Position numbers and translations under genes: made by a program
Shown: positions 2,755-56,941 of the stretch, piece by piece
How the letters are laid out: each line of letters begins with the position of its first letter
Position numbering within the stretch: the first letter of the stretch is position 1
The notes under the pieces: model-generated
The model's input: only the letters and a program-made list of their open reading frames with translations
The model's database searches: none
What the model was told of the DNA's origin: nothing
Origin: Trichoplax adhaerens
Lineage: Eukaryota > Animalia > Placozoa
Length of the DNA stretch: 64,000 nt
Reading direction: 5' to 3'
Assembly (NCBI RefSeq): GCF_000150275.1
Contig: NW_002060950.1
Location: forward strand, 68,679-132,678

Positions 2755-2950
2755 TTCTGTACTGTACCGTACAGTACAGTACGTACAGTGTACTGTACTG
2801 TACAATACCGTAACTGTACTGTACAGTGTACAGTACAGTACAGTAATGATAGACAAGCTAATGTACTGTACTGTACACTGTACAGTACAGTACAGTATGC
2901 TAACTATTATACAGTACTGTACTGTAGTAAACTGTACTGTACAGTACTGC
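2755..2950. repeat. Degenerate TACAG/CTGTA pentamer array upstream of eIF3a (shared eIF3a/PACRGL promoter region)
   Basis: Dense runs such as ACAGTACAGTAC, TACTGTACTGTACA and ACTGTACAGT. Confidence 0.85.
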
Positions 2951-3246
2951 GTGCGGTCCTAGTCTTCCGATTGCATACGCACTTCCGATATAGCGAAATG
3001 ACCAGTTAAATAGTAAGCCTCCACATTTTTTTAAATGAAAATCGATGACAGTCCCTCTCTCTCTCTTCTTTAAGTATTCCCTGCTAATATCATAGTACTG
3101 TACTACAAGAAAAACCTTAACCATTACCGTACCCATGTAGCATGCTACATGGGTTCCCATAGTAATCAATACAAAATTTTGAATCAAAAATCGGAGTGTC
3201 TAGTTCTTGTCACTGATTTTAATTACAGTGGTAAGTGCTGTAGCAA

Positions 3247-3470
3247 GTACTGTACAGTGTACAGTACATTACGGTTGTGTGCAAAAACTTTGAACATGTC
3301 AACTACAAATTACAGGTTCTCGGATATTGGATCACGGGCACAGCTGCGGTACTGTACAGTACTGTACCGTACGCTGATACAACACTATGTACTGTACCGT
3401 AATGTACACTTGTACAGTACAGTACAGTACAATACAGTACACTCGAATATAAAGTACTGTATACTACAGT
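3247..3470. repeat. Degenerate TACAG/CTGTA array immediately upstream of PACRGL
   Basis: Runs such as GTACTGTACAGTGTACAGTAC and TGTACAGTACAGTACAGTAC, ending ~90 nt before ATG 3562. Confidence 0.8.
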
Positions 3471-3561: not shown

Positions 3562-6209
<2,648 letters not shown>

Positions 6210-42300: not shown

Positions 42301-45300
42301 ACCTGATGCTATACGATGTGCTTGCAGGTTTTACCCACAATTTTTTTAAAGGTACTAGAACTATTTCTTTAAGTTAAATCACTACTATTTCATCTATGAT
42401 ATTTTGTAGGAGGAAATTTAGTTACTATCAACGGAAATAATTTTGGAAATTCCAATAATTTGCAGTTTCCGGTACTAATTGGTGTATCCCCATGTAAAAT
42501 ACAAACATACAGCAATACTCAAATCACATGCATTACCACTTCACACCAAAGAGGTACTTTTAAACTTCAGGTAGCCATCGAAGGGCGTGGCATGGCCATC
42601 ATAAATGGAAACGCTAACTACGAGTACATCTTCAAAATCCTGAATATAATTCCAAGATTTGGCTCTATTACTGGAGGAACAGAAGTTACAATCAGTGGAG
42701 AAGGATTCGGAACAAACGCATCCAATTTCATCATAACTCTCGGCTCATCAGATTGTAACCCGATATCAAGTAATGCTACAGCTATCAAATGTATTACAGA
42801 AAGTTCGTTGAAGGAAGTGCAAATTGATAACTCAGGCCATAGTAAAGAATTTGGTCTTGGCTACGCATGGAACAAACCAAATGTTACAATTACTGTCGGT
42901 ACATTTATCAAGTGGAGTTGGTCTGCAGTTGATTATTCATCTTTACGCTACGGTGTTGTTCAAACCAGTTCTAAAGACTCAACATTTTATGATGGAAGTG
43001 GATTCATCAGCCAGCGTTCCGCTACCGGTTCGTTCAGGCATCAGTTTACTGTCCCTGGAGTTTACTACTATTCCGCAGGTAATGTCGATGGGCGTGATCT
43101 AGTTAAAATGAATGGTATCATCAATGTCATAGTAGAAAAAACTGCAAGTGCAACTTTTTCGCTAAAAACTAAGCAAGGTTATGAGGCGAATTACGTTAAC
43201 GAGGAGGTGAACATGACATCAGACAACTCAGGTTGCTCATTCGGAGATGGTCGCACTAGCTCAATCATTGGGTGTGTAGATCCTAAACCGTCAAATATCG
43301 AGCCAACCATGTTTAAATTTACTTGGTGGAGATGCAGCACCCCCATTATCTCTACAATAGAGCCAAATATCGGTACAAGTGCCACCAATATTGTAATTCG
43401 TGGTAAAGGATTTAGTACCACTGCCTGTCAAAATATTGTATCAGTAGGGAATTACTCCTGTTCAATATTATCATCTTCTACAACTGAAATCGTTTGCAAG
43501 CCTACTTTGCAAGGATCTATGACTCCTGGAATCCGTCAGGAGATAAAGTTGTTAGTTAAAAACTTAGGCTACTCATTAACGACAATTGCAAGTGTAAGTA
43601 AAAGATCTTTCACCTTAATGCCAACGATCTCCTCGGTGACTCCAAGAACAGGATCCATTGCTGGTGGCACAGTAGTGACAATTACCGGTGATGGCTTGTC
43701 AGCAAATAACATAGAACCTGTAGTTCAAATTAATGGTTCACTTGATTGTAAGGTCAAGACTAAATCATATACACAAATTACTTGCGTAACTCCCAAGGTC
43801 TTATCCAGTACAAATAACTTAGATGTGAAAGTTCATATCAATGCTGTCGACAGCGTTTGTCATGGAAATGCATGTAGTTTTGCTTTCACGTCAGCTAGGA
43901 CTCCCACGATAACCAGCATTAACCCGACAACTTTTGTCAGTGGGACTACAGTTACTCTTTCAGGTTCTGGATTCTCAGCAAACTCATCTTATATCACTGT
44001 CAAAGTCGGCAATTTTAGATGTCCAGTCATAACTGCATCTAAATCATCAATATCTTGTAACACACTAAACGTAACTTCAGGTACACACAATATTAGTGTC
44101 TACGTAGCCGATAAAGGCAACGGTAGATTCCAATCCGATAATAAAGTGACAAATCAAGCTGTAATTACAGCGATTTCTCCATTGCATGGCAGCTTATTAG
44201 GCAACACCTTACTGACAATATCAGGCAGCGGTTTTAGTAGCAAGAAAGATACTTCAGTCAAAATAGGCGGAACATCCTGCACAATTCAAAGTGTAACAAC
44301 TTCACAAATTAAGTGCAGAACTACGGCAAAGACCGAAGGCAGCTATGACGTATCCGTAACATCGCATGGGATAGCATATCCCAAACAAACATATAGCTAC
44401 AGAGCAAGCTCAACACCATCTGTAACAGGAATTAACCCAACAGCCGGCGAGAGAGGAACCACAGTAACTTTAACGGTAACTGGAATAACTTCGGGAATCT
44501 CTGATATAAATGTTAAAATAGGAAGAGCGAGTTGTATTTTGCAGTCATTCACTGGTAACACAATTGTTTGCACAACAACAGCAAACACTGCCGGTAATTA
44601 TGATGTACAAGTCATATCTGATGGTGATGGTAAAGCTTCAGGAACGGCTCAATTTAGGTATAGACTAAAGGTCGTAAGTGTATCCCCATCCAGATCTTTG
44701 CTAGGCGGAGGCCGCTACATCACCATTCAAGGTAACAGTTTTGATGTACTAGGAGGTACCACTGTCAAAGTGTGTGGCATTATATGTATACAAGATCAAA
44801 ATACGAACCTGACCGAATCAATTGTAACTTGCGAGGCGCCATCCATGAATGTTAATCAAATGAATGATTTGAATTGTTCTATCGATGTTAGTACCAGTTC
44901 CGGACAACAAGCAACACTTGCTGATTCTTTCAGATACTTAGCGTCTGGAACCCCTGTTGTAACCGCCATATTTCCTAATCGAGGTGGTACCGCTGGCGGC
45001 ACAGCAGTCACGATAAGTGGAACAGGTTTCAACACACAGCCAGGTAAAATTTCAGTGTCCATAGCTGGTACAGCATGTTCGATTAATTCTCTTACATCAA
45101 CATCGATTAATTGTACGACCGGCCCACACCAACGAACCGAAAAAGCGCTTGTGAGGGTTTATACTACCCTCGGTAACCGTGCAGGCCTACCAATCTACAA
45201 CACCACTGATAAAGAATTTTACTACGCTGACTTCTGGTCCTCTAAATATACTTGGGGGGGCAGGGATCCTCCAACGGAAGGAGATTATGTTGTGATCAAC

Positions 45301-48300
45301 AAAACCCAAACGGTTATTCTAGATGTTGATACACCAATTCTAAAATTTCTACTGCTGAAAGGAGGAAAGCTCATATTTGACGAAAAAGATCTTACCTTGA
45401 AATCCGAATACATTCTTATAACTGATAAAGGCGCACTCCAAGTAGGTACTGAAGACAAGCCGTTTCAACATAATGCCAACATTATTTTATATGGCCACGT
45501 GCGTTCCAAAGAATTACCTATTTATGGTGCTAAAGTGCTTGCCGTTAGGGAAGGAACATTAGATCTCCATGGTAGGCCAATTCCTGTTACTTGGACAAGG
45601 CTAGCATCAACCGCCCATCAGGGAACTACAACTCTCAACTTAGAATTAGCAGTAACATGGCAGTCGGGAGATAAATTAGTATTAGCTTCCACTAGTACCA
45701 GTCCTGAAGAGAATGAGGAGGTAACCATTGCGAGTGTTACCAATGGCGGGAAAACGGTGCTACTACAGTCGCCTTTACGATATACACATATCTCAGTATC
45801 TCAAAATATTGCAGGTCAGACCATTGAAACCCGCGCAGAAGTTGGTTTATTAACACGAAATGTTGTAGTTCGAGGGTCGAAACATTCAGAATGGATTGAA
45901 TTTGTCAAGGAATGCCCTGTCGACTTTGATCCCGGCCAGTTTGCGACTCAAACCTGCTTCTTAGGTCGTTACGGGAATGAAACACTGAGCGATCAATTCG
46001 GTTGTCATATTATGATGGCGTCAAAAGAAATGGATAAAGATCTGATCGTTGGGAGGCTATCGTACATCGAAGTAACTCATGCTGGTCAGGCCTTTCGCCT
46101 TGGAAGATACCCAATTCATTATCATTTAATGGGAGATATACAGACATCTTATGTACGTGGCTGTGCCATACATAATACGTTCAACAGAGCAGTCACGATT
46201 CATGGAGTTCATAAATTGACGGTAGAAAACAATGTAGCTTATAACACCATGGGACATAGCTTTTTTTTGGAAGACGGTATCGAAACAGAAAATATCATAC
46301 AGTACAACCTTGGTATCTTTACGAGACAATCTTCAAGCTTGCTTAATGTAGACATCACGCCAGCAACATTTTGGATAACTAACCCCAATAATACTGTACG
46401 CCATAACGCTGCTGCAGGTGGCACTCATTTCGGTTACTGGTTTAAAATACCAACTCACCCTGAAGGGCCTTCATTTACTACAAAAATTTGCCCAAGGAAT
46501 GTCAATATCGGCCAATTCTATAACAATTCAGCTCATTCTTTCGGTCGCTTTGGTTTATGGATCTGGCCGAATTATCATCCAAAAGTAGGTGGCAGTTGCA
46601 ATTCCAATGTGGATGCCCCGGTAAAATTAGAAAAATTTCTATCCTACAGAAACCGTAAAGGTGCTGAGGGAGTAAGCAGCGGTTCAACACAGTACGTAGA
46701 CTTTACAGTAATGGATAACATACAAGCAGGTCTAGAAATTCACCAGGTATCAGGTAAATGGGGAGAACAAGGTCCTCTAGTGCATAATTTGATTACGGTT
46801 GGCCATAGCCAAGTCCAAGGTCCTACTTTTATCTGCCAGCAAGCGGGCTTAAAAACCCCCAAATCTTCTAGGCTAACAGTTAAAAATGCTACGTTTGTCA
46901 ATTATGATCGCACTGGCTGTTGGGCTTTAATCCCTTGCGCTTTTTGTAAAGCCAATCAAGGTGGATTTCCAACAAAATTTGAAGAAATAGCGTATTTAAA
47001 CTCACCTAACAGGGTGCGGTTCAACTATGCTCATGAATGTATTTATGAAGACACTGATGGAACGTTAACTGGTATAATCGGAGGTAGTTATGTCCCTTGG
47101 AATGACAATTTGCCGCTATCAAACTGCGTCAAGGGTGAAGTAGAAATAAGCGATGAAGCTCCTGGCGCTAAATGTGATGAAACGGTTGTAATCAGACGTT
47201 TATCATGGAATCAGCCAAGTCCGTCAGCTTTACTATTTAAAGATACAGTTCTTACCAATCGTTTCGGCAGTAGTGTGGTACCTTATAAAAAGAAAAGGCT
47301 TACCCATCCTAAGGGTTGGATGGCCACCCTTGTTATGGGAGAGGACTACAACATGTACTGGAGAAATGCTGCTCATTTGGTAAATATAAGCTACACAGCT
47401 GGATTCTACGAATTAATGAGCGAAGATTATGTTTACATGAATCACCAATTGACTCAGATACCGGACCATTTCGCGACGACTACTAAGTTTATGAATATGT
47501 CCGACGGTTTACCAGATCCGCTGACTGCAGAAAATGGAGAATGGTTTTTTAACCGTACAACTAAGTCCTTTTATTACATTACCAAAGGTAGTGAACTAGA
47601 ACAACCGCTATATAAACGCAATATGCAACCGAAAGTTTACCAATGCTACTTCAGGGATTGTGTCAAACCTGTACCTAAACCAGCTCCTAGACAGCGTCCT
47701 TCAGACTATCGGTTATGGTCCGAGAAAGGTAGTTGGAATGGTAAAGTTAATAAGGCTATACCGAAGTTTGGGGAAGAGATCGTAATTGAGAAGGACTGGT
47801 GGATGGTACTCGACGTAGTTGATCTACCCTACTTCAAAAAAATTACTATTTATGGAGCTTTAGAATTTGACGATAATTCTGATAAAGTCTTAAATACCTC
47901 CTACATTTTCATTCACGGTGGCCAATTAATTATTGGGTGGGAACATAGTCCGTACACCCATAAAGCACACCTTATACTTAGTGGAAATCATCAAACACCT
48001 GAAATAGTTTTAACCAACGGACCTGTTTTAGGAGCCAAGGCCATCGGTGTTTTTGGCTATCTTGATTTACATGGTAAACCTAAATCAACAACATGGACGC
48101 ATCTAGCTCAAACAGCTCCTGTTGGTGCTAATGAGATCACGTTAGAAGAAGCAGTCGATTGGGAACTAGATGATGAAATAATTATTACTTCTTCTACGTA
48201 CGAACCTTTCCAAACCGAAAAAGCACAAATTTCCCATATTTCTACTGATAAGCGCACTATTACCCTATATCAGACTTTACGCTATTCTCATTTATCTGCT

Positions 48301-51300
48301 GTTAACATGGTCAGTGGGCGCCAGTATGCAATGAAAGCGGAGGTGGGATTACTAACACGTAATATTGTGGTTGAAGGAGCAGAAGATGCTATCGGATCGC
48401 TATCAAAGCAAAGCTTTGGTGGCCGTATTTTAGTAGGATCATTTCAGCAGAATGATGGTACAAGATTTACAGGTAATGCCAGAATTGACTACGTGCAATT
48501 TAAAAACACTGGGCAGGAAGGATATCGAGATTATTTCGATCCGCGATTTTCCATTGCGTTTCTGGATATTGGTTTCGTTCCGGCTATGAATCAATTTTAT
48601 TCTTACGTTCGAGGGTGCAGCTTTCATGACGGATATAATACCGCAATCGGAGTTTTCGGCACTGAAAATATGACCGTATCAGACAACGTAATTTACAAAA
48701 CTGTAGGCTCTTCGATTCGAGTTTGGGGTCGAAAAAATCGAATTATTCATAACTTAGCTTCTTTGACGCTAGCCGTCGCTACCTACAATGGTAGATATGA
48801 AGAAGAAAATACCGAATGGGAAGCAAGTTTTGAAGTACATAAAGCCGTTGAACTAACACTGCGTGATAATGTTGCCGCGGGTTCCCAACGCGCCGGATTT
48901 CGTATCCGTGGCGAAAAATGTTATAATATCAATCCGTCGATCAGTTGGTCAAATAATATTGCACACTCGAACATCCATGGTATCATGATGGGTTTTCAAG
49001 ACGCAGAACCAGGCTGTACAAGAATTGCAAACTTTGTTTCTTATCGTAATTACGATTACGGAATATTCTTTTATCAATCATCCCGTATGATAATGTATAA
49101 TGTTACGTTGATCGACAATGTCTGCGGTATTATGCCGTTTGTTTATGCTCCGGCATCAGTGACACATTTAACAGCAAATAAATTTGTTCGCATCCAAGAA
49201 TCCATGATTATAGGTACAAGTCCAAATTTTGATTGTAGTGCTGACTTCGTGATCCCTAAAGATACTGCCATCACTAAAAAGCATCGATGTCCTAAACCTG
49301 CCTCTGGTGGTAGAGCCGGGATATTTATGACCAGCTTCGTCTCCGGTACAAATGCAGCCCCCTTTAAACCGTGGCATGGAGTCAAAAATTATCCTGCTAT
49401 CAACGGCATAACAGAAATTTCTTCTGTTATATTTGCTAATTTTGGTATTGCTTGCGGAAAGCGTGATGTAGCTATTAGTTCAAATAAAAAAACACCTGAT
49501 GCTATTCATCCGATTCAAATGTCTGGTATTACGCTGGACAACGTCTATGAATCATCGAAGTTATACTTCTTCCCCCCAAGTATCAGCTGGGTCAATCCAT
49601 CTGATTGTGTCGATATGGATTGTGATGGTCAAAAACACGCATTGATAAGAGATTTAGACGGAACCTTTCTAGGTAAGACTGGCAATACAGCTATTGGCAA
49701 AGCGGAATATGAATGGGATGGAGATCCCAGGCGTGGTTTAGGTGATTACCGAATACCCAAGACATTTTTAACTGCACTAAACGGATCTCGAATCGCCGTA
49801 AATTCTGTAGCGCCTTATAAAGGTATTGTACGCGGAAATCGTACGTCTTCTAACTGCAACTGGGTAAGTGAATGGAATGCTTATAGGTGTTCAGGACTCG
49901 ATCACCAAATGTTTATCATAGAGAGCATGGATAAGGATACCGAAACGCGTCGTATTTCCCCAGTAGCTCTCGCTGCAGATGGTTACCTGGACTTATTAAA
50001 TGGTCCTCAAGACTTTGGCTGGTGTCTTGGCTATACTTGCCAAGAACGTTTATCTACCTTCTTTACTACTGTGTCAACTGGAAAACTCTACGATGTTCAC
50101 TTCACAGGAACTAACCCCCAGCACTTACGATTGCATTTAATCAATTCTAATTATAATCAAGCCATTGTTGTTGGGATCTTTTATTCCAATCCTCAACGTC
50201 TTGATGTCTATCAATTAGGCACTTATGTTAACCCCACTAACGCTAAACTTAGTGGTAGTACCTTCGAGTATCTTCCGAAAGATCCGAAAAATCCTACTAA
50301 GTTTATTCCTAACTTTCATGGAATAAATGGATTGAACTATTACGATAGTGCTAAACAAACCCTCTATATTTTGGTTCGAGGAAGCAACCCAATCGATATT
50401 ATCACAATGCCGATAATACAGCTCTCCTTGAAATTGCCCGCGATTACGATAGACGAGTTTTTTGAAAAGAATTTAGTTAATAATATTGCTGAATTACTAG
50501 GTATCGATAAGTCAAAAGTAAGGTATGTTGAGGCCATTAATGAGCAATCGAATACCAGACGAAAACGAGCTTCTAGTACTATGACAGTTATTGTAGAAAT
50601 TGGCAATCCACCAGCACCAACAGTTAACGTTGTTGCAGAAGAATTTTACGAAGTAAACTCTACTGACGGTATTAACTCGACTTTACTTTTCCCTCCTCCT
50701 ACTTCTGCTACAACTAATCCAACTCCAAGTTCATATCCTCAAAATTATACCGGAACTTCAGAGCAGATGACCCTTGTTACACTGCAAGTACTAGCCAATA
50801 AAGTTGTGGAGGTCGCCCAAATTGGCGCTTTTCACAAAAAAGGTTACAATCTTCTAGAAATTACTGTTACTGATCCAAGCTCTAGTCCTCAAGATCCACG
50901 AGAGGGGAATCCGTATACAAATACATCTGACTCACCAAATGGAACGGTCTTATATCAAGAGTTACAGGAATCACTGAAACTAAATTCAAGCTCTTACAAT
51001 AGTTCATCGTATACATACCTAATTGCCGGTCGACTACATTTGCAAATGCAACCATCCGGAAGCAACGAAACCGTTTCGCTTCCTACTCAGCCTAGTTTAG
51101 CAATGCTAGATATAAATGGTAATCTAATAAAGCAACTTGGACATCGTTATAGCTCTAATCCATGGACAGTAACGGCATATTTAAAATCTGGATACGGTCA
51201 CAACGATGCTTTCATTGGTGGTAATAATACAGTTTCTTTTTCTTCTGGAATTGCAAATTTTACTGATTTAAGTATTTCTCATAATGGTACGTATGTACTA

Positions 51301-54300
51301 TGTTTTAACGTTTCTCAGCCAATAGAAGCAAACTTTAGTATTTGTTCTCAAGAAATAGAGATATTAGAACGTATTTTTTACCTAAAAATGATACGAGAAA
51401 TTGCTGGAGCAAATGAAACTGTACCATTTCACATGCAACCAGTTGTGGAAATACTCGATGCAGCAAATCATGAAAGAATTACTAATCTAGGCTGGAAAAA
51501 GCGTAATTGGTTTATGCACGCCAAAATTGTAAATCAATCAATTGATGGAAAAATTGGCGGTCAAAATGTATTAAATCTTCTCCATTTACAAGAAATTGGT
51601 CTCGCTACATACGAAAGTTTAAACATCAATTACGCTGCTAAAGATTATGTTTTAAGTTTTTCTTTAATAACAGAACCGAAGTCATCCTATACAAATTTAT
51701 CAACTAATAGTGCTCCTTTTGAAGTTAAAGAACGTATGTTTTACCTAAGTGTTATTCGACAGCCCAGAAATTGCAATGAAACTGTTGCATGTGGGCAACA
51801 ACCTGCACTCGCTATTCACGATAAAGCCAACGGACAAATTGTGAACAATATAGGCTGGCGAGGTAGAAAGTGGTTCATTCAAGCGTACTTAGATGGGAAC
51901 TGCTCAACAACGCTAAATGGTCAAACGAGACTTCCGATACCAGCTAGCGGCATAGCACAGTTTACAAATTTAAGTATATATGATTCTGGTGAACAATTCT
52001 CATTGTTTTATAATGTTAGTTTAGATCAATATTCTGCGACTTATTCTGGTTTATCGGTAAAGAGTAAGAAATTTAACGTCGGCATGAGAGAATTCTACCT
52101 CCATGTTACCATGCAACCTTCTAATGCCAACGAATCTGTAGTTTTCGGACAGCAGCCGATAATAGAAGTTCGTGATGTCGGTACTCAGAAGATTGCAACG
52201 CCATTGAAAGAACCTTGGTATATATACGTTTCTTTAGTCAAGAACCCATGGCCATTGGAGAGTAACGTTTCTCTATTGGGTACTAAAAATGTGACTGTAT
52301 TTAACGAACGGGCAAGATTTCAGAATCTACTGATAACGAAATATGGTATCGGATATAAGTTAAAATTTATATCCACACCTGCGAGCAAAGTTATTAGATC
52401 AAAGTTGTTTGAAGTATTTTATGTCAATAGCTATTCTCCGGTTTTTAATGAAACTAATAGCTTGTATAAATCTACAATATCAGAGAATGTTGAAATTAGA
52501 AGTTACGTTGTTACAGTATTTGCAACAGATAATGATACTGGACCCCAAGGTAAAGTGTACTATGAAATAACAAATGGAAATTCCGATGGTGCATTTGATA
52601 TTGACAAGACGAACGGTCGTATCGTTACTAATGGATCACTTGATCGAGAAAAAGTTTCAGTTTTTACGTTAACAATAACAGCATATGACGGAGCAGTGAT
52701 CGAGAAAAGACGATCTACAAACGCAACAGTCATTATTACATTGCTTGATGTCAACGATAATACTCCTTACTTTGCAGAATATCCAGCGCACTATATTGTT
52801 CCAGAAAATACACGGATTGGCGAAACTGCTGCTATAATTGATGTTCGCGATCCTGACGCTGGCGAAAATGGGGCACTAAATTTTACGATGCTTTCATGTG
52901 ATTTATGCGGCTACTTCATACTAAATTCCACTACTGGAGCTTTCATTACTAATAAGAGCTTGGAACTAGAAAATTCGACTACATTACTACCGTATACAAA
53001 TTTTACGTTTAATATTCACGTTGCAGACCGTGGTACTCCACAGCCCAGAGCAATTACTGGAATAGTTATCTTAACAGTTATACCGACTAATGAATATGCA
53101 CCAGTATTTACTCGAACTAACTTATCCCTAACATTAGCAGAGAACACGAAGGTTGGACATTTAGTAGTGAAAGTTTTAGCTACAGATCGAGATATCGATC
53201 GCCACGGTATCGTGGATTACTACATTGAATCAGGAAACTTTCGTAAGACATTCTCTATTGCTAAAACAAACGGTGAAATTATTTTAATGCAACCACTAGA
53301 TTATGAAACATATTCGTCGTATAAACTCGTAATTACAGCACAAAATGGTCAAGATTACAAGAAGGCTACAAAGATGACCGTTCACATAACGGTTACTGAT
53401 ATACCAGACACAAATGGAGATGTCATCTTAATAGAAGATGTTTTGCCAAAAATTGCACCTTATCAAAGCGTAGCATCATTTGCTGGAATACCTAGTTTTA
53501 GCCCAATCAAAGTTATTTTAAAGTCAAAGCAAGGCAAACGGACCGATATCACCAATGATGTATCTCAAACTATTTTTGATAGTGAAGCAACACATAATTC
53601 TCTAATCGTTAGCCGTCGTAATGGCACGACAGTAATTACCGCTGAACGAGCTACTGTTAACCGCCTGAAGGTTCGTGTTATTAATGTCGGTATCATTGAC
53701 GTTCCATTAATCGCTGTAGATTATACAAGTCTACAATTACAAGCATTTTTATTCCCAAATATTAATAAGGAGGAAGTTAGAAAGGTTTATCTTATCGGCC
53801 GTAGTAAACAATTCGTCAAAGTCGTTTTTTATGCAAAGATAAAAATTAGTGACGGCGAAGTTATTGACGTAACTGATAGTAACCATACCAAATTTTCAAT
53901 ATCGTACAAAAGTTCTGCCAAAGCCGCGTTAGATTCTACCATCAAATCGAACAATGTTCTAACCGTTAATAAAAGCAGCCCAATCGGTAAAATTATTATA
54001 CATGGGTCTTTCGCTAATCAATCGAGACAGGAACTAGTTTTGCACGTTAGTCATGAAGCTGTCAACATTTCTTCTATGCTATCGGTCAACTTAAACCTTC
54101 GAAATAACACTCTGTATGGCACGGCAAATTCAACGATTGCCAGACCAGAAGTCGTGATGAAAATGGCTAACGGAGATAAATTGATGATTAGCAACTTTGT
54201 AACATACCCAAACCTAGTGACATTCACTGTGTCAAAATCGAAATACGCTCGCGTAAACCGCACAACAGGCATAATAACATTACTAGCCAACTATTATGAC

Positions 54301-56941
54301 CCTGTGATTTTTACGGCTTCATCACTTGATAAACCATTCATCAAGACCTTTATTTCATTTTATTGCAATGTAATACCAGGTTTAGGAGGCGTCCATCTTG
54401 GCGAACTTGTCGGGCCGGCAATTGGAAGTTATCTAAAAGGACAAAATGTCAATGTTAACGTCTATGTTAATCGCGGCTCAGCTAAACTGGCAGCTGTTAA
54501 TGTCCTTATTAAATTCGATCCCAATAATATAAAAGCAATCAGTTTTACTCCTAGTCATGACAATGATATTATTTTCGCTTTATACAATACCACTATAAAG
54601 GTTGGAGGTCTAATCAATGCTGCTGACAATACTTATGGGATAATGTACAGGATTGGATTTATTTCAGCGATAATAATGAAGCCAGGTTATCCAAACATTA
54701 CTGGGCGTCCTTTGGAGATTATCGACAATTCTCTTCAATATTTAAACAGTAACATTGAGGTAAAGAAATGTGTTAAGCCCGCAATGGGAGACAGTAACGG
54801 AGATTGCAGTTTTAATATTATGGATGCAGCATATATAAAGATCGAATCCTCGAAAGCCTTGCAGCCTCTAAATGTATCACTGGACTATGACCATAATCAA
54901 GTTGTCGATTATGCTGATGCCTTATTTTTAGTTAAAGTATTTTATAATTTAGCGAGATTTATCAAAAGCGTGTCTGTTAATATCCCACACAATAAAACTG
55001 ACTGCAAGTTGAAGATCGTCTTGCAATTAATGAAAGGCTACGGAGAAGTTACCAGTGACAAGCCTGATCTGTATGTTGCATTCACTTATGGTAATAATTC
55101 TATCGCACACTTTATGTCCACTTCTCGATTTGAAGTCGGTCAAATGATGCGTGAAGGCACCGTTACAGGCAATACTATTAATGGGGTAATTGTGAAAGCC
55201 GAAAGTGATAACGCTAGAAATTACCACATATCTGCTACAACAAGCCATGCAATAGGTAAAGTTGGAATATCGATATTCCAAGTACTGAGAGATTCAAGAA
55301 ACTCGGTGGGAAATATTGCAATCTCGTCAAGCGTTGGAACGAAACAACCCTATTTATACACTGAAACTGTTAAAATACAGCTCGCTAGTAATCTTAGTGT
55401 CGTTTATAAAAATGGATTTTCTCCAATGCAAATCTATAATATAAACACTTCGACCTATCTATGTTACTATCCTATTACCACGAAACAGGTGATATGGAAA
55501 TTTGAGAACGATTATGATCGAGTTGTAAAGCATAGAGAAGCGCAATTTTACACCTTTATACGCAGTATCATAAGTTCTAGATACCAAAGTATAAGCTGCA
55601 CGGGCTTTAAAATTAGCAAAGGTAGCATTTTAGTCCAGTTTAATGCTACCGCACCGTTTGATCAATTGAATCGGTCGTTGGTAATAATGTACACAGAAAT
55701 CCAAGCTGGAATTTCTATATCATATCATGGACATGTGCTAAAAACAGTAAAGGAAATGTTGGTTAATGGTCAACAATACTTTGGCACAGGAGAACGTCCT
55801 GGATTAAAAGGTGGTGAAGCTGCCGGCATGATTATTGGAATCAGTTTAGGAATTATAATCACGATAATTTTGGTTTATGGTGGCTATAAATATAAAACTC
55901 AATTGTCTAACAATGCAAGAGTTTCTTCAGTAGAGCTGCCTAATGACACAAAAATAGCCAAGTCCAAGGTTTCATATGAAGGTTCCTTCGATAATTACAA
56001 CTGTAGCAAGAGTGATATAAAATCTAAATGCCAAAGCGAACAACATTCTACTGAAATTACTGTGGAATCAACCATAAATAAAGTGCTTTTACCAGATATT
56101 GGAGATTCTCTGGCTTCACCGTCAAAGAATGAGGAATTTACTCCTTCAATACGTTTAGAAAATGGCTTACAAAAGTCACCATCTGTCAGTTCAAATATGG
56201 GAAATAAATTGTTGGTTGATAACTCTCGTAGTCGTGGAATGTCCATAATTTCGTTACCTCCAAACTATGTAAATGAAACTGATGCTATGGGTAAGTGCGA
56301 TAGACTAGATATTATGTATTTGCAATCATATTTTACATTCTAGATAAGTAAGGAAAAGATTGTGAGTTACCAGCAATATACCCAATAATTGTTTACCAAA
56401 CTATTCTGCAGATGGAGCAATAAAAATGTCAGTCAAGATTAAAAAATGCAGTGGATCATTTGGAAACATTGGCGTTATAAGTGTTTTACCGACGGAATAT
56501 ACCTTAGCAAATATTCGTGCGGTTATCCTTAAAGTCCTTGGTGAACAATTGATTGGTAAAGAATTCATCTTCATTTCTGAAAAGCTTGATGAAATTCACC
56601 CAGCAAATGAACGGAAAGCTATTGCAAGGGATATTTTCCATGAGGATACAATTCTCATCAAACAACTTAAACTGCTGTGTAAGTATATCATTTTAGCATT
56701 TCAGTAAATAACGTATATATAAATGAAAATAATTATGTTACCAATGTACGTAAATGCGTTATCTTCTGTCCCGATTTTGAAATATCAAACAGCTGACAAT
56801 CGTTCAGAGACTTGTACTTGCGGAAACCAAGCGAAATTCGAATGTTGCAGACAGCAATCATACTGTAGTATCAGATGTCAGAAGTTGGATTGGCCGTTCC
56901 ACCGAGCCAACTGTAGAAAGCCTGCTTTGGATAAGATTTAA
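33312..56941 (+). CDS. Giant (~6,000 aa) fibrocystin-L/PKHD1L1-like single-pass receptor with added cadherin, cohesin/dockerin-like, SEA-like and intracellular MYND modules
   Basis: Signal peptide MALPQLILCIALLSCSHG (exon 33312-33363). About 19 small 5' exons carry IPT/TIG repeats (P..GS..GGT.VTI.G.GF) and PA14 (LSGYFVAP..YSFLIKSDD). Exon 42410-56290 carries more TIGs, two G8 domains (WSSKYTWGG; WSEKGSW), beta-helix repeats (GQAFRLGRYPIHYH), CVDMDCDG, cadherin repeats (LDRE, DVNDN) and a TM helix (~55819-55887). Exons 56412-56678 and 56793-56941 join in phase. Confidence 0.9.

What the first reader, a model, noticed from the sequence alone, without database searches (positions are those of the whole stretch)
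54380..54950. Cellulosome-type cohesin followed by a dockerin inside an animal cadherin-containing protein (coherin-like)
Seen: KGQNVNVNVYVNRGSAKLAAVNVLIKFDPNNIKAISFT resembles a cohesin beta-sandwich start (G..V.V.V.....L.A....I.FDP..L). It is followed by two Ca-loop/helix segments, GDSNGDCSFNIMDAAYI and DYDHNQVVDYADALFL, which fit the duplicated dockerin pattern. Known: cohesin-dockerin pairs assemble bacterial cellulosomes, and cadherin+cohesin 'coherins' were described in choanoflagellates and sponges. Inference: cis or trans cohesin-dockerin docking could multimerise this receptor, and the find may extend coherin-type modules to another lineage.
Basis: partly seen in the sequence, partly recalled or inferred. 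Interest (0 to 1): 0.85.

Follow-up and report, generated by a model that had tools for sequence, protein, structure and literature searches.

The report
Self-docking cohesin-dockerin pair in placozoan receptor
A giant cell-surface protein of the simple animal Trichoplax carries a real cohesin and a real dockerin side by side, the two modules bacteria use to snap cellulosomes together; they are predicted to clasp each other and are shared with giant cadherins of choanoflagellates.

Summary

**Location.** Window 54349-54978 lies in one 13.8-kb exon of a Trichoplax adhaerens gene. The ortholog in Trichoplax sp. H2 is annotated "Fibrocystin-L". RNA-library contigs show the exon spliced.

**Modules.** The stretch encodes a cohesin (ORF aa 3964-4090), a 13-residue linker and a two-loop dockerin (aa 4104-4173).

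**Evidence for identity.**
- Pfam barely sees the Trichoplax copy on its own.
- It is a clear member of a cohesin-dockerin didomain repeated 2-4 times in giant cadherins of Salpingoeca rosetta and many unnamed relatives.
- Profiles built without Trichoplax score 53.8 bits (cohesin) and 40.3 bits (dockerin). The best of 2000 shuffles scores 7.5.
- The family profiles hit solved cohesins at 1e-6 and dockerins at 5e-8.
- The AlphaFold model matches cohesins only at the top (Z 9-11).
- All ten calcium-ligand positions of the dockerin are kept.

**Predicted docking.** A complex prediction places both dockerin helices on what I read as the cohesin's canonical 8-3-6-5 face (score 0.79, best control 0.01).

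**Best reading.** I read it as a cis, calcium-dependent clasp. In 83% of relatives' copies the linker carries furin-type sites, so the clasp could hold cleaved fragments together. Trichoplax has lost those sites.

Binding and cleavage are inferred, not shown. Novelty: a new variant of a known kind.

The parts
42460..56290 (+). Coding part of one giant exon (4610 codons) of the Trichoplax adhaerens receptor. Order: IPT/TIG x9, G8 + CEMIP beta-helix x2, unassigned repeats, cadherin repeats, cohesin-dockerin cassette, TM, tail.
   Evidence: ORF. Pfam. 99% identical to residues 1265-5858 of P0156 (RDD41961.1, Trichoplax sp. H2, 5948 aa). The splice donor at 56290 is used in RNA-library contigs.
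52414..53421 (+). Cadherin repeats (ORF aa 3319-3654).
   Evidence: Pfam PF00028 at 7.2e-47 with 3 stretches. ORF aa 3540-3651 matched cadherin repeats of thousands of proteins.
53422..54348 (+). Pre-cohesin part of the cassette (about 310 aa, ORF 3655-3963). The fold was not determined here.
   Evidence: Collinear phmmer alignments to the stretch before each cohesin in P0050, P0068, P0088, P0106, P0130 and others, up to 73 bits. No Pfam hit.
54349..54729 (+). Cohesin module (ORF aa 3964-4090). It is a shortened version, lacking about 16 profile positions (125-140) present in relatives.
   Evidence: 53.8 bits against a homolog-only HMM. Pfam Cohesin at 16.9 bits, E 0.0074, below the cut-off of 24.1. 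AF2 beta-sandwich with pLDDT 82-94. Foldseek and VIA tops are all cohesins. The deletion is visible.
54730..54768 (+). Linker of 13 residues between cohesin and dockerin. It has no R-x-[KR]-R site.
   Evidence: The stretch measured between fixed alignment columns is 19 aa here, against a median of 46 in 147 homolog copies. 122 of those copies carry at least one furin-type site there.
54769..54978 (+). Dockerin module (ORF aa 4104-4173). It has a conserved Cys pair, two Ca loops and two helices.
   Evidence: 40.3 bits against a homolog-only HMM. The family profile A3 hits solved dockerins 4fl4_A and 4dh2_B at 5.2e-8. AF2 helices at residues 157-169 and 188-201.
54790..54825 (+). Ca-binding loop 1 (12 residues, ligand positions D-N-D-N-D).
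   Evidence: Positions 1, 3, 5, 9 and 12 are 95-100% D/N across 147 copies. Trichoplax keeps all five.
54883..54918 (+). Ca-binding loop 2 (12 residues, ligand positions D-D-N-D-D).
   Evidence: Positions 1, 3, 5, 9 and 12 are 90-100% D/N across 147 copies. Trichoplax keeps all five.
54979..55539 (+). Domain X, about 190 aa with two invariant Cys. It follows every didomain in relatives. Fold unknown.
   Evidence: jackhmmer and alignment A4. No PDB profile hit and no atlas hit.
55819..55887 (+). Predicted transmembrane helix (ORF aa 4454-4476). It places the cassette outside the cell, about 280 aa from the membrane.
   Evidence: A 23-residue hydrophobic run read directly from the translation. 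No TM predictor was run.
56291..56411 (+). Intron (GT..AG) that ends the giant exon.
   Evidence: Loose ends of RNA-library contigs at 56290 continue at 56412.

Best explanation
Window 54349-54978 encodes a true cohesin module followed, after 13 residues, by a true dockerin module. Both lie in the extracellular, membrane-near part of a giant Trichoplax adhaerens receptor.

The receptor has a fibrocystin-L-like N-terminal half, then cadherin repeats, then this cassette, a TM helix and a tail. The pair is the placozoan copy of a conserved cassette: pre-cohesin region, cohesin, dockerin, domain X. That cassette is repeated 2-4 times in giant cadherins of the choanoflagellate Salpingoeca rosetta and of many unnamed relatives.

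**Most likely mechanism.** The dockerin, with two Ca2+ bound in its F-hand loops, folds back onto the 8-3-6-5 sheet of its own cohesin. This forms a compact, calcium-dependent clasp in cis.

In most relatives the linker carries one or two furin-type sites. After cleavage in the secretory pathway, the clasp would be the non-covalent joint that keeps the two fragments together. In Trichoplax the linker is short and has no such site, so the clasp stays covalently closed and probably serves as a rigid, Ca-stabilised unit.

**Shown here:** module identity, family membership, conservation of the Ca ligands, transcription and splicing.

**Inferred:** Ca binding, cohesin-dockerin contact, cis rather than trans geometry, and cleavage at the basic sites.

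**My odds:** module identity about 0.95, the two modules binding each other about 0.7, cis about 0.55.
For: - **Sequence.** Homolog-only HMMs score 53.8 and 40.3 bits against 7.5 or less for shuffles. 19 of 23 aligned copies hit Pfam Cohesin (best 4.7e-12) and 10 of 23 hit Dockerin_1. Many relatives carry precomputed PF00963 and PF00404.
- **Profiles against PDB.** Cohesins from 1.3e-6 and dockerins from 5.2e-8. In the joint profile, cohesins align to positions 27-138 and dockerins to 193-269.
- **Language-model features.** The nearest clusters are bacterial proteins of about 200 aa with cohesin plus dockerin, score 0.94.
- **Structure.** AF2 with 23 sequences gives pLDDT 74 and pTM 0.70 for the two modules together. 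Foldseek and VIA tops are all cohesins.
- **Docking.** ipSAE 0.79 against a best control of 0.01. Partner pLDDT is at least 84, and the three runs agree in at least 98% of contacts. That mark was reached by 51 of 78 solved complexes and 2 of 108 mismatched pairs. The contacts fall on model strands that I number 3, 5, 6 and 8 by their order, and on both dockerin helices.
- **Unit behaviour.** 147 copies were aligned with cohesin and dockerin adjacent in the same order. A few partial matches exist, such as a dockerin-only hit in P0009.
- **Ca ligands.** They are 90-100% conserved, and all ten are kept here.
- **Covariation.** The strongest of 11,700 inter-module column pairs joins a strand-6 Gly to a helix-3 Phe/Tyr, both in the predicted interface. 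Five of the top 20 pairs are interface-to-interface (hypergeometric 1.3e-4).
- **Partners in the genome.** Only this locus and its near-identical copy on a short contig match either module profile, so the partner is most simply self.
- **Furin-type sites.** 122 of 147 copies have at least one and 81 have two. Both S. rosetta didomains have two.
Against: - No binding, calcium or cleavage experiment exists.
- The complex predictor may score from memory of solved cohesin-dockerin complexes. The tool itself warns that a pass then shows likeness, not that this copy binds. A small molecule also rode along, which the calibration did not include.
- The Trichoplax copy alone is below Pfam's cohesin cut-off and gives no Dockerin_1 hit. 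Its cohesin is shortened and its last strand is modelled with low confidence, pLDDT 39-52 at residues 121-140.
- The covariation signal is largely carried by a difference between paralogous copy classes, so it reflects few independent events.
- I had no model coordinates, so cis geometry rests on the pTM, the short linker and the contact list.
- The own-genome search works exon by exon and can miss divergent partners.
Confidence: 0.6

Rival explanations
1. Trans docking. The dockerin of one molecule binds the cohesin of another copy of the same receptor, on the same cell or an opposing one. This would build dimers, chains or cell-cell links.
For: The same predicted interface is compatible with domain swapping. 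Only this protein supplies both modules in the genome, so any trans partner would be homotypic. The protein also has adhesion-type cadherin repeats.
Against: Cohesin and dockerin were adjacent in all 147 aligned copies, and the Trichoplax linker is short; both make intramolecular pairing kinetically favoured. AF2 folds the single chain into one unit with pTM 0.70. The covariation is between modules of the same didomain, although homotypic trans pairing would give the same signal.
Confidence: 0.2
2. Vestigial modules. Both folds are inherited from a coherin-like ancestor but no longer bind each other in Trichoplax. They would serve only as spacer domains in the stalk of the receptor.
For: The cohesin is shortened, the furin-site linker is deleted, and the copy is divergent at 23-31% identity to relatives. 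It is below Pfam cut-offs.
Against: All ten Ca-ligand positions, the conserved Cys pair and the covarying Gly/aromatic interface pair (G with Y) are retained. The predicted complex scores 0.79 on the Trichoplax sequences themselves without an alignment.
Confidence: 0.15
3. Chance resemblance: a generic Ig-like sandwich followed by unrelated EF-hand loops.
For: A direct Pfam scan of the 237-aa piece and phmmer against PDB found nothing. Single-sequence AF2 failed.
Against: Profile, fold, language-model and homolog-HMM evidence all point specifically to cohesin and dockerin. Pilin-type Ig folds rank below all cohesins, and calmodulins rank far below dockerins.
Confidence: 0.02

Closest known systems
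[quoted passage not shown] 2012, as cited in PMC6030884). The named relative here is Salpingoeca rosetta XP_004996428.1, 'FAT3 protein'.
   Same: A transmembrane protein with cadherin repeats plus a Pfam-type cohesin. The whole cassette (pre-cohesin region, cohesin, dockerin, domain X) is collinear and homologous.
   Different: Trichoplax has one cassette, not 2-4. It gave no TMEM132-type Ig hits and has no furin-type sites in the linker. Its N-terminal 3300 residues are fibrocystin-L-like (PA14, IPT/TIG, G8, beta-helix) rather than long cadherin arrays. I could not read Nichols 2012, so I could not check whether XP_004996428.1 is one of their named coherins or whether they noted the dockerin.
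Bacterial cellulosomal type I cohesin-dockerin pairs (for example C. thermocellum 1OHZ/2CCL, C. acetobutylicum 6KGC).
   Same: Same two folds. The dockerin has the same duplicated 12-residue Ca loop plus helix. The dockerin helices are predicted to seat on what I read as the cohesin 8-3-6-5 sheet.
   Different: Here both modules sit next to each other in one eukaryotic cell-surface polypeptide, not on separate scaffoldin and enzyme chains. A Cys pair conserved in 96-97% of copies sits at the start of the dockerin and in loop 1. The inter-repeat linker is longer in relatives. No carbohydrate-active enzyme is attached.
Non-cellulosomal bacterial proteins of about 200 aa carrying both a cohesin and a dockerin (ESM Atlas clusters; the class reviewed by Peer et al. 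2009, cited in PMC6030884 but not readable here).
   Same: Cohesin and dockerin in one short unit. These are the nearest neighbours of the Trichoplax piece by language-model features (0.94, 205 of 256 features).
   Different: They are free-standing bacterial proteins. No alignment or order of modules was checked here, so the relation is a lead only.
TMEM132 family (PMC6030884).
   Same: Animal single-pass adhesion-type proteins with a cohesin homologue. That paper links them to coherins, hedglings and lefftyrins.
   Different: The TMEM132 order is conserved region, cohesin, three BIG domains, and no dockerin is detectable in vertebrates (PMC6030884). No TMEM132 Pfam model hit the Trichoplax protein.
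Processed non-covalent receptor joints: Notch S1/heterodimerisation domain, GAIN and SEA autoproteolytic domains, furin-processed FAT1 (from my own knowledge, not checked here).
   Same: The proposed logic for the choanoflagellate copies is the same: cleavage in the ectodomain, with the two fragments kept together by a dedicated module.
   Different: The holding module would be a cohesin-dockerin pair, which is unrelated in fold. Trichoplax lacks the cleavage sites. Cleavage is inferred from motifs only.

Membership tests
Cohesin (Pfam PF00963, cellulosome-type) | Nine-stranded jelly-roll beta-sandwich of about 140 aa. | tested here: met
   The AF2 model has eight clear strands at pLDDT 82-94; the ninth is short or uncertain. 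All listed Foldseek hits with E <= 0.001 are cohesin or cohesin-like modules, best 5.9e-6. The VIA top 26 are cohesins at Z 9.1-11.1, rmsd 2.5-3.5 A over 107-115 residues.
Cohesin (Pfam PF00963, cellulosome-type) | Sequence match to the family model above the curated cut-off. | tested here: inconclusive
   The Trichoplax copy scores 16.9 bits, E 0.0074, against a cut-off of 24.1. A six-frame PF00963 scan of the genome found nothing. The family it belongs to does match: 19 of 23 copies, best 4.7e-12, and profile A2 hits 6kgc_A at 1.3e-6.
Cohesin (Pfam PF00963, cellulosome-type) | Binds a dockerin on the 8-3-6-5 sheet. | not testable with these tools
   Prediction only: ipSAE 0.79 against 0.01 for the best control. 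Contacts are at cohesin residues 48-51, 73-77, 84-88 and 122-131.
Dockerin type I (Pfam PF00404) | Two tandem segments, each a 12-residue EF-hand-like Ca loop (ligands at positions 1, 3, 5, 9, 12) followed by a helix, about 70 aa in all. | tested here: met
   The loops are at ORF 4111-4122 and 4142-4153, with D/N at all ten ligand positions. These are conserved 90-100% in 147 copies. Helices follow each loop in the model.
Dockerin type I (Pfam PF00404) | Sequence match to dockerins rather than to other EF-hand proteins. | tested here: met
   Profile A3 aligns full-length to 4fl4_A and hits 4dh2_B at 5.2e-8, and 2ccl_B and 1ohz_B at about 1.6e-6. Solved dockerins and dockerin-bearing enzymes fill nearly all rows above the first calmodulin at 7e-3. 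The Trichoplax copy scores 40.3 bits against the homolog-only HMM. Pfam Dockerin_1 itself does not hit the Trichoplax copy.
Dockerin type I (Pfam PF00404) | Ca2+-dependent folding and cohesin binding. | not testable with these tools
   Inferred from conserved ligands and the complex prediction run with two Ca.
Coherin (cadherin plus cohesin, Nichols et al. 2012 as cited in PMC6030884) | Cadherin repeats and a cohesin domain in one membrane protein. | tested here: met
   Cadherin PF00028 at 7.2e-47, cohesin as above, and a hydrophobic TM run at ORF 4454-4476.
Coherin (cadherin plus cohesin, Nichols et al. 2012 as cited in PMC6030884) | Homology to choanoflagellate or sponge coherins beyond shared domain types. 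| tested here: inconclusive
   Cassette-level homology to S. rosetta XP_004996428.1 and relatives is clear. The defining paper is not held, so I could not confirm that these are the named coherins. No sponge sequence was examined.
TMEM132 | Conserved region, cohesin, then three BIG/Ig domains (Pfam Ig_TMEM132_2nd, 4th, 5th, 6th). | tested here: not met
   No TMEM132 model hits the Trichoplax ORF or P0156, whereas relatives such as P0068 hit the 4th, 5th and 6th domains. Genome scans for PF16070 and PF23481 were blank, but their controls rang nowhere, so they say little.
Fibrocystin-L / PKHD1L1 (the name given to the H2 ortholog) | IPT/TIG arrays with G8 and parallel beta-helix domains, single TM. 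| tested here: met
   TIG at 5.9e-101, G8 at 4.8e-70 and CEMIP beta-helix at 6.4e-70. PA14 plus TIG in the upstream 1264 aa of P0156. Cadherin repeats and the cohesin-dockerin cassette are additions not implied by that name.

The most novel reading that the evidence does not exclude
The cohesin-dockerin didomain is an ancient holozoan 'snap joint'. In choanoflagellate giant cadherins, proprotein convertases cut the linker, and the Ca-loaded dockerin bound to its own cohesin becomes the only, force-bearing link between the fragments. This would be a new kind of processed-receptor joint, analogous to GAIN, SEA or the Notch HD. Trichoplax would keep an uncleaved version, which would be the first dockerin, and the first matched cohesin-dockerin pair, described in an animal. 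It would also answer the question raised for TMEM132 of what eukaryotic cohesins bind.
Probability: 0.35. Interest if true: 0.85.

Novelty: new variant of a known kind. Interest (0 to 1): 0.68.

Why it matters
Cohesin-dockerin is among the strongest known protein-protein locks, and is known almost only from bacterial cellulosomes.

PMC6030884 states that eukaryotic Pfam-type cohesins were thought to be limited to choanoflagellates and sponges. It also states that the partner of animal cohesins is unknown, because no dockerin is detectable in vertebrates.

Three things are new here:
- A placozoan receptor carries both halves of the lock side by side.
- The pair is a conserved unit shared with choanoflagellate giant cadherins.
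- It is predicted to lock onto itself.

This gives a concrete, testable partner for eukaryotic cohesins. It adds Placozoa to the lineages with coherin-type modules. Through the furin-type sites in relatives, it also suggests a previously undescribed way of holding processed adhesion receptors together.

The full-text library I could search holds no paper linking dockerins to cadherins, choanoflagellates or Trichoplax, apart from the TMEM132 paper. Key older papers were not readable.

Tried and rejected
- **Direct scans of the Trichoplax piece.** The first Pfam call failed on a frame error. Pfam on the 237-aa and 700-aa pieces gave no cohesin or dockerin. phmmer against PDB gave nothing relevant. 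Single-sequence AF2 gave pLDDT 33 and was unusable.
- **The search for homologous proteins, region 3944-4180 of the ORF.** Blank. The full-length H2 ortholog is hidden behind a 271-aa cluster representative, and distant relatives share too few words.
- **The search of protein representatives.** My 901-aa query began inside a cadherin repeat, so the 150 listed hits were swamped by cadherins. Only 8 cassette-bearing proteins surfaced.
- **The search for homologous proteins with alignment A1.** Only 2 hits because of the length window. The distribution in sponges, cnidarians, ctenophores and bilaterians therefore stays unknown.
- **Six-frame Pfam scans of the genome.** PF00963 gave none. PF00404 gave one weak hit elsewhere, E 0.83.
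- **TMEM132 models on the genome.** Blank, but the controls rang nowhere, so these are uninformative.
- **Domain X.** No PDB profile hit and no atlas hit.
- **SEA-like reading of the juxtamembrane stretch around 55618-55647.** No support from Pfam or PDB.
- **Papers.** Nichols 2012 and Peer 2009 are not held.
- **The look-up of encoding contigs.** P0080 gave only an unnamed ENA contig, so the organisms of the unnamed relatives remain unknown.
- **Covariation.** It is reported only as weak support because it follows paralog classes.
- **Rejected readings.** Generic Ig plus EF-hands, and membership of TMEM132.
- **Operator rules.** The exon was used by reference, and the database protein P0156 served for the full length.
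Full report
**1. What is at the coordinates**

The finding lies inside one open frame, window 42460-56343 on the + strand (4627 codons).

Pfam assigns the frame nine IPT/TIG domains, two G8 plus CEMIP beta-helix units and cadherin repeats. It assigns nothing to the last 900 extracellular residues. A 23-residue hydrophobic run at ORF 4454-4476 places all of this outside the cell.

**2. Organism and gene**

The assembly has 105.6 Mb in 1414 contigs and about 34% G+C. A 271-aa fragment that is 99% identical is NCBI XP_002118714.1 (TRIADDRAFT_62730, Trichoplax adhaerens).

The same cluster holds RDD41961.1, "Fibrocystin-L" of Trichoplax sp. H2 (5948 aa, P0156). The window ORF equals residues 1265-5858 of that protein at 99% identity. 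About 1264 residues, including a PA14/GLEYA domain and more TIG domains, therefore come from upstream exons.

Contigs from three runs on record as RNA cover 54202-56290 without a break. They continue at 56412, skipping a GT..AG intron at 56291-56411. The exon carrying the finding is thus transcribed and spliced, and its coding part ends at 56290.

Everything from the window was searched by reference to this single exon.

**3. First tests on the Trichoplax piece alone were nearly blank**

- Pfam on a 237-aa piece gave no cohesin or dockerin.
- phmmer against PDB gave nothing.
- A word-based homolog search gave nothing.
- Single-sequence AlphaFold failed.

The only early signal came from language-model features. 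Its nearest clusters were almost all bacterial proteins of about 200 aa with Pfam Cohesin plus Dockerin_1 (score 0.94, 205 of 256 features).

**4. The family**

A full HMMER search with ORF aa 3540-4440 was dominated by a cadherin repeat that I had left at the start of the query. It still brought in eight proteins of 4800-7400 aa.

Each contains two or three complete copies of the whole post-cadherin stretch, collinear with Trichoplax. The order is a pre-cohesin region of about 310 aa, the cohesin-like part, the dockerin-like part, and a further domain of about 190 aa that I call X.

A second search from one of these proteins gave 52 relatives. The only named one is Salpingoeca rosetta XP_004996428.1, "FAT3 protein". 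Many carry precomputed Pfam Cohesin and Dockerin_1 together with cadherin and TMEM132-type Ig domains.

I aligned 147 didomain copies in which cohesin and dockerin are adjacent and in the same order. A few partial matches also exist, for example a dockerin-only hit in P0009.

**5. Is the Trichoplax copy a member?**

HMMs built from the 147 copies without Trichoplax hit ORF 3965-4090 at 53.8 bits and ORF 4104-4173 at 40.3 bits. The best of 2000 shuffles of the segment reached 7.5 bits. With tighter bounds, Pfam Cohesin also touches the Trichoplax piece itself (16.9 bits, E 0.0074), but this is below the curated cut-off of 24.1.

**6. Are the family's modules cohesin and dockerin?**

- 19 of 23 aligned copies match Pfam Cohesin (best 4.7e-12). 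10 of 23 match Dockerin_1 (best 4.1e-4).
- The joint profile against all PDB sequences returns almost only cohesins (profile positions 27-138) and dockerins (positions 193-269).
- The cohesin profile alone (50 sequences) hits 6kgc_A at 1.3e-6, the archaeal cohesin 2xdh_A at 1.5e-6, and about twenty more cohesins.
- The dockerin profile alone hits 4fl4_A at 5.2e-8 with a full-length alignment over both repeats. It hits 4dh2_B at 5.2e-8, and 2ccl_B and 1ohz_B at about 1.6e-6. Solved dockerins and dockerin-bearing cellulases fill nearly all rows before the first calmodulin at 7e-3, which has no individually significant stretch.

So the second module is a dockerin rather than a generic EF-hand pair.

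**7. Structure**

With the 23-sequence alignment, AlphaFold gives pLDDT 74 and pTM 0.70 for the 210 residues. The model is a beta-sandwich (residues 15-126, pLDDT mostly 82-94) followed by two helices at 157-169 and 188-201.

In Foldseek against PDB, all listed hits with E <= 0.001 are cohesin or cohesin-like modules (best 6kge_A at 5.9e-6, 1anu at 8.4e-6). VIA-align gives Z 9.1-11.1 for 26 cohesins (rmsd 2.5-3.5 A over 107-115 residues). These rank ahead of pilin and adhesin Ig-like domains, which reach Z 8.9 at most.

**8. Details of the dockerin and the linker**

Across the 147 copies, loop positions 1, 3, 5, 9 and 12 are D/N in 95-100% of copies for loop 1 and 90-100% for loop 2. Trichoplax keeps all ten.

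Two Cys are present in 96-97% of copies and in Trichoplax. One lies just before the dockerin and one is at loop-1 position 6. A disulfide between them is my inference.

The stretch measured between the cohesin's end and the first Ca loop has a median of 46 residues in the relatives. 122 of 147 copies carry at least one R-x-[KR]-R cluster there, and 81 carry two. Both S. rosetta didomains have two.

In Trichoplax the same measured stretch is 19 residues, and the true linker between the modules is 13. It has no such site. The Trichoplax cohesin also lacks about 16 profile positions (125-140) that relatives have.

**9. Do the two modules bind each other?**

I submitted the Trichoplax cohesin (139 aa) and dockerin (71 aa) as separate chains with two Ca.

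- The score (ipSAE) was 0.79, 0.79 and 0.82 in three runs. The best of three controls scored 0.01.
- Partner pLDDT was at least 84, and the runs agreed in at least 98% of contacts.
- That mark was reached by 51 of 78 solved complexes and 2 of 108 mismatched pairs. The tool warns that these counts hold only roughly here because a small molecule rode along. It also warns that a pass for a family with solved complexes may reflect memory of those complexes.

The contacts fall on cohesin residues 48-51, 73-77, 84-88 and 122-131. By their order in the model, I number these strands 3, 5, 6 and 8, which form the sheet that cellulosomal cohesins use. The contacts also fall on both dockerin helices.

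As an independent check I computed corrected mutual information between cohesin and dockerin columns of the 147 copies. The top pair of 11,700 joins a strand-6 glycine to a helix-3 aromatic residue, both inside the predicted interface. It is G with F or Y in 87 copies and non-G with non-aromatic in 55, with only 5 mixed. Five of the top 20 pairs are interface-to-interface (hypergeometric 1.3e-4). The signal follows paralogous copy classes to a large extent, so it reflects few independent events. I count it as weak support.

**10. Cis or trans**

Profile searches of the whole Trichoplax assembly find each module only at this locus and on a short contig with a 99% identical copy, probably an allelic duplicate. 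The partner is therefore self.

The following favour intramolecular docking:
- the adjacency in all 147 aligned copies;
- the short linker;
- the single-chain pTM of 0.70;
- cohesin residues 127-131, just before the linker, touching dockerin helix 1.

I had no coordinates to measure whether 13 residues suffice. Homotypic trans docking is not excluded.

**11. Proposed mechanism**

*Shown:* a true cohesin and a true dockerin, adjacent, extracellular, expressed, with intact Ca ligands, and belonging to a cassette shared with a choanoflagellate.

*Inferred:* the dockerin binds two Ca2+ and sits on its own cohesin. In relatives, convertase cleavage at the basic sites would leave the cohesin-dockerin contact as the joint between fragments. 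Trichoplax has lost the sites and keeps a closed clasp that stiffens the membrane-proximal stalk.

*Rivals:* homotypic trans docking (about 0.2) and vestigial non-binding modules (about 0.15).

**12. Comparison with what is known**

[quoted passage not shown] It describes the TMEM132 order as conserved region, cohesin, three BIG domains. It also reports that dockerin homologues are not detectable in vertebrates.

The Trichoplax protein meets the descriptive definition of a coherin (cadherin repeats plus cohesin) and is homologous to the S. rosetta cassette. It differs in three ways:
- it has one cassette, not 2-4;
- it gave no TMEM132-type domain hits;
- its N-terminal part is fibrocystin-L-like.

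It is not a TMEM132 member.

Searches of the held literature for dockerin together with cadherin, choanoflagellate, Monosiga or Trichoplax returned only the TMEM132 paper or irrelevant papers. Nichols 2012 and Peer 2009 could not be read, so prior mention of the dockerin there cannot be excluded.

**13. Verdict**

I rate it a new variant of a known kind, with interest 0.68. The main open points are experimental binding, Ca dependence, cleavage in relatives, and the distribution in other animals.

Noticed in passing
window 54979-55539: Domain X: about 190 aa with two invariant Cys. It follows every cohesin-dockerin didomain in Trichoplax, S. rosetta and relatives. It has no Pfam, PDB-profile or atlas match.
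   Followed up: partly
linkers of the didomains in P0195 (S. rosetta), P0068, P0175 and others: One or two R-x-[KR]-R clusters lie between cohesin and dockerin in 122 of 147 copies, followed by a conserved motif of three spaced cysteines around a Pro-Pro pair. Both are absent from Trichoplax and from some copies of P0199 and P0202.
   Followed up: partly
window 56291-56411: GT..AG intron, spliced out in contigs of three RNA-library runs. The long ORF's last 53 bases (56291-56343) are therefore intronic.
   Followed up: yes
G000:C1077:580-1176 (L002): A 99% identical second copy of the didomain on a short contig, probably an allelic or assembly duplicate. It corresponds to the partial NCBI model TRIADDRAFT_62730.
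   Followed up: partly
window 55618-55647 (ORF aa 4387-4396): A G-S-I-L-V motif in the last about 100 extracellular residues recalls the SEA-domain autoproteolysis site. Pfam and PDB searches gave no support.
   Followed up: partly
window 51031-52413 (ORF aa about 2858-3318): Four repeats of about 115-120 aa, each opening with an R-x-F/H-Y/L-L motif and an N-E-T/S-V motif. They lie between the second beta-helix unit and the cadherins and have no Pfam assignment.
   Followed up: no
P0156 residues 355-443 (upstream exons, outside the giant exon): A PA14/GLEYA sugar-binding-type domain near the N-terminus of the full-length ortholog.
   Followed up: no
P0162 2761-2883, P0165 2767-2890, P0188 918-1035 and others: A second, much weaker cohesin-like match (E 1e-3 to 7e-5 against the didomain HMM) lies about 800 aa upstream of the second cassette in several relatives. 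It may be a TMEM132-type cohesin next to the TMEM132-type Ig domains.
   Followed up: no
G000:C1414:11823339-11823473 (L003): The only other Dockerin_1 hit in the genome. It is weak (E 0.83, 16.9 bits) and lies in a 132-aa open frame. It was not examined.
   Followed up: no
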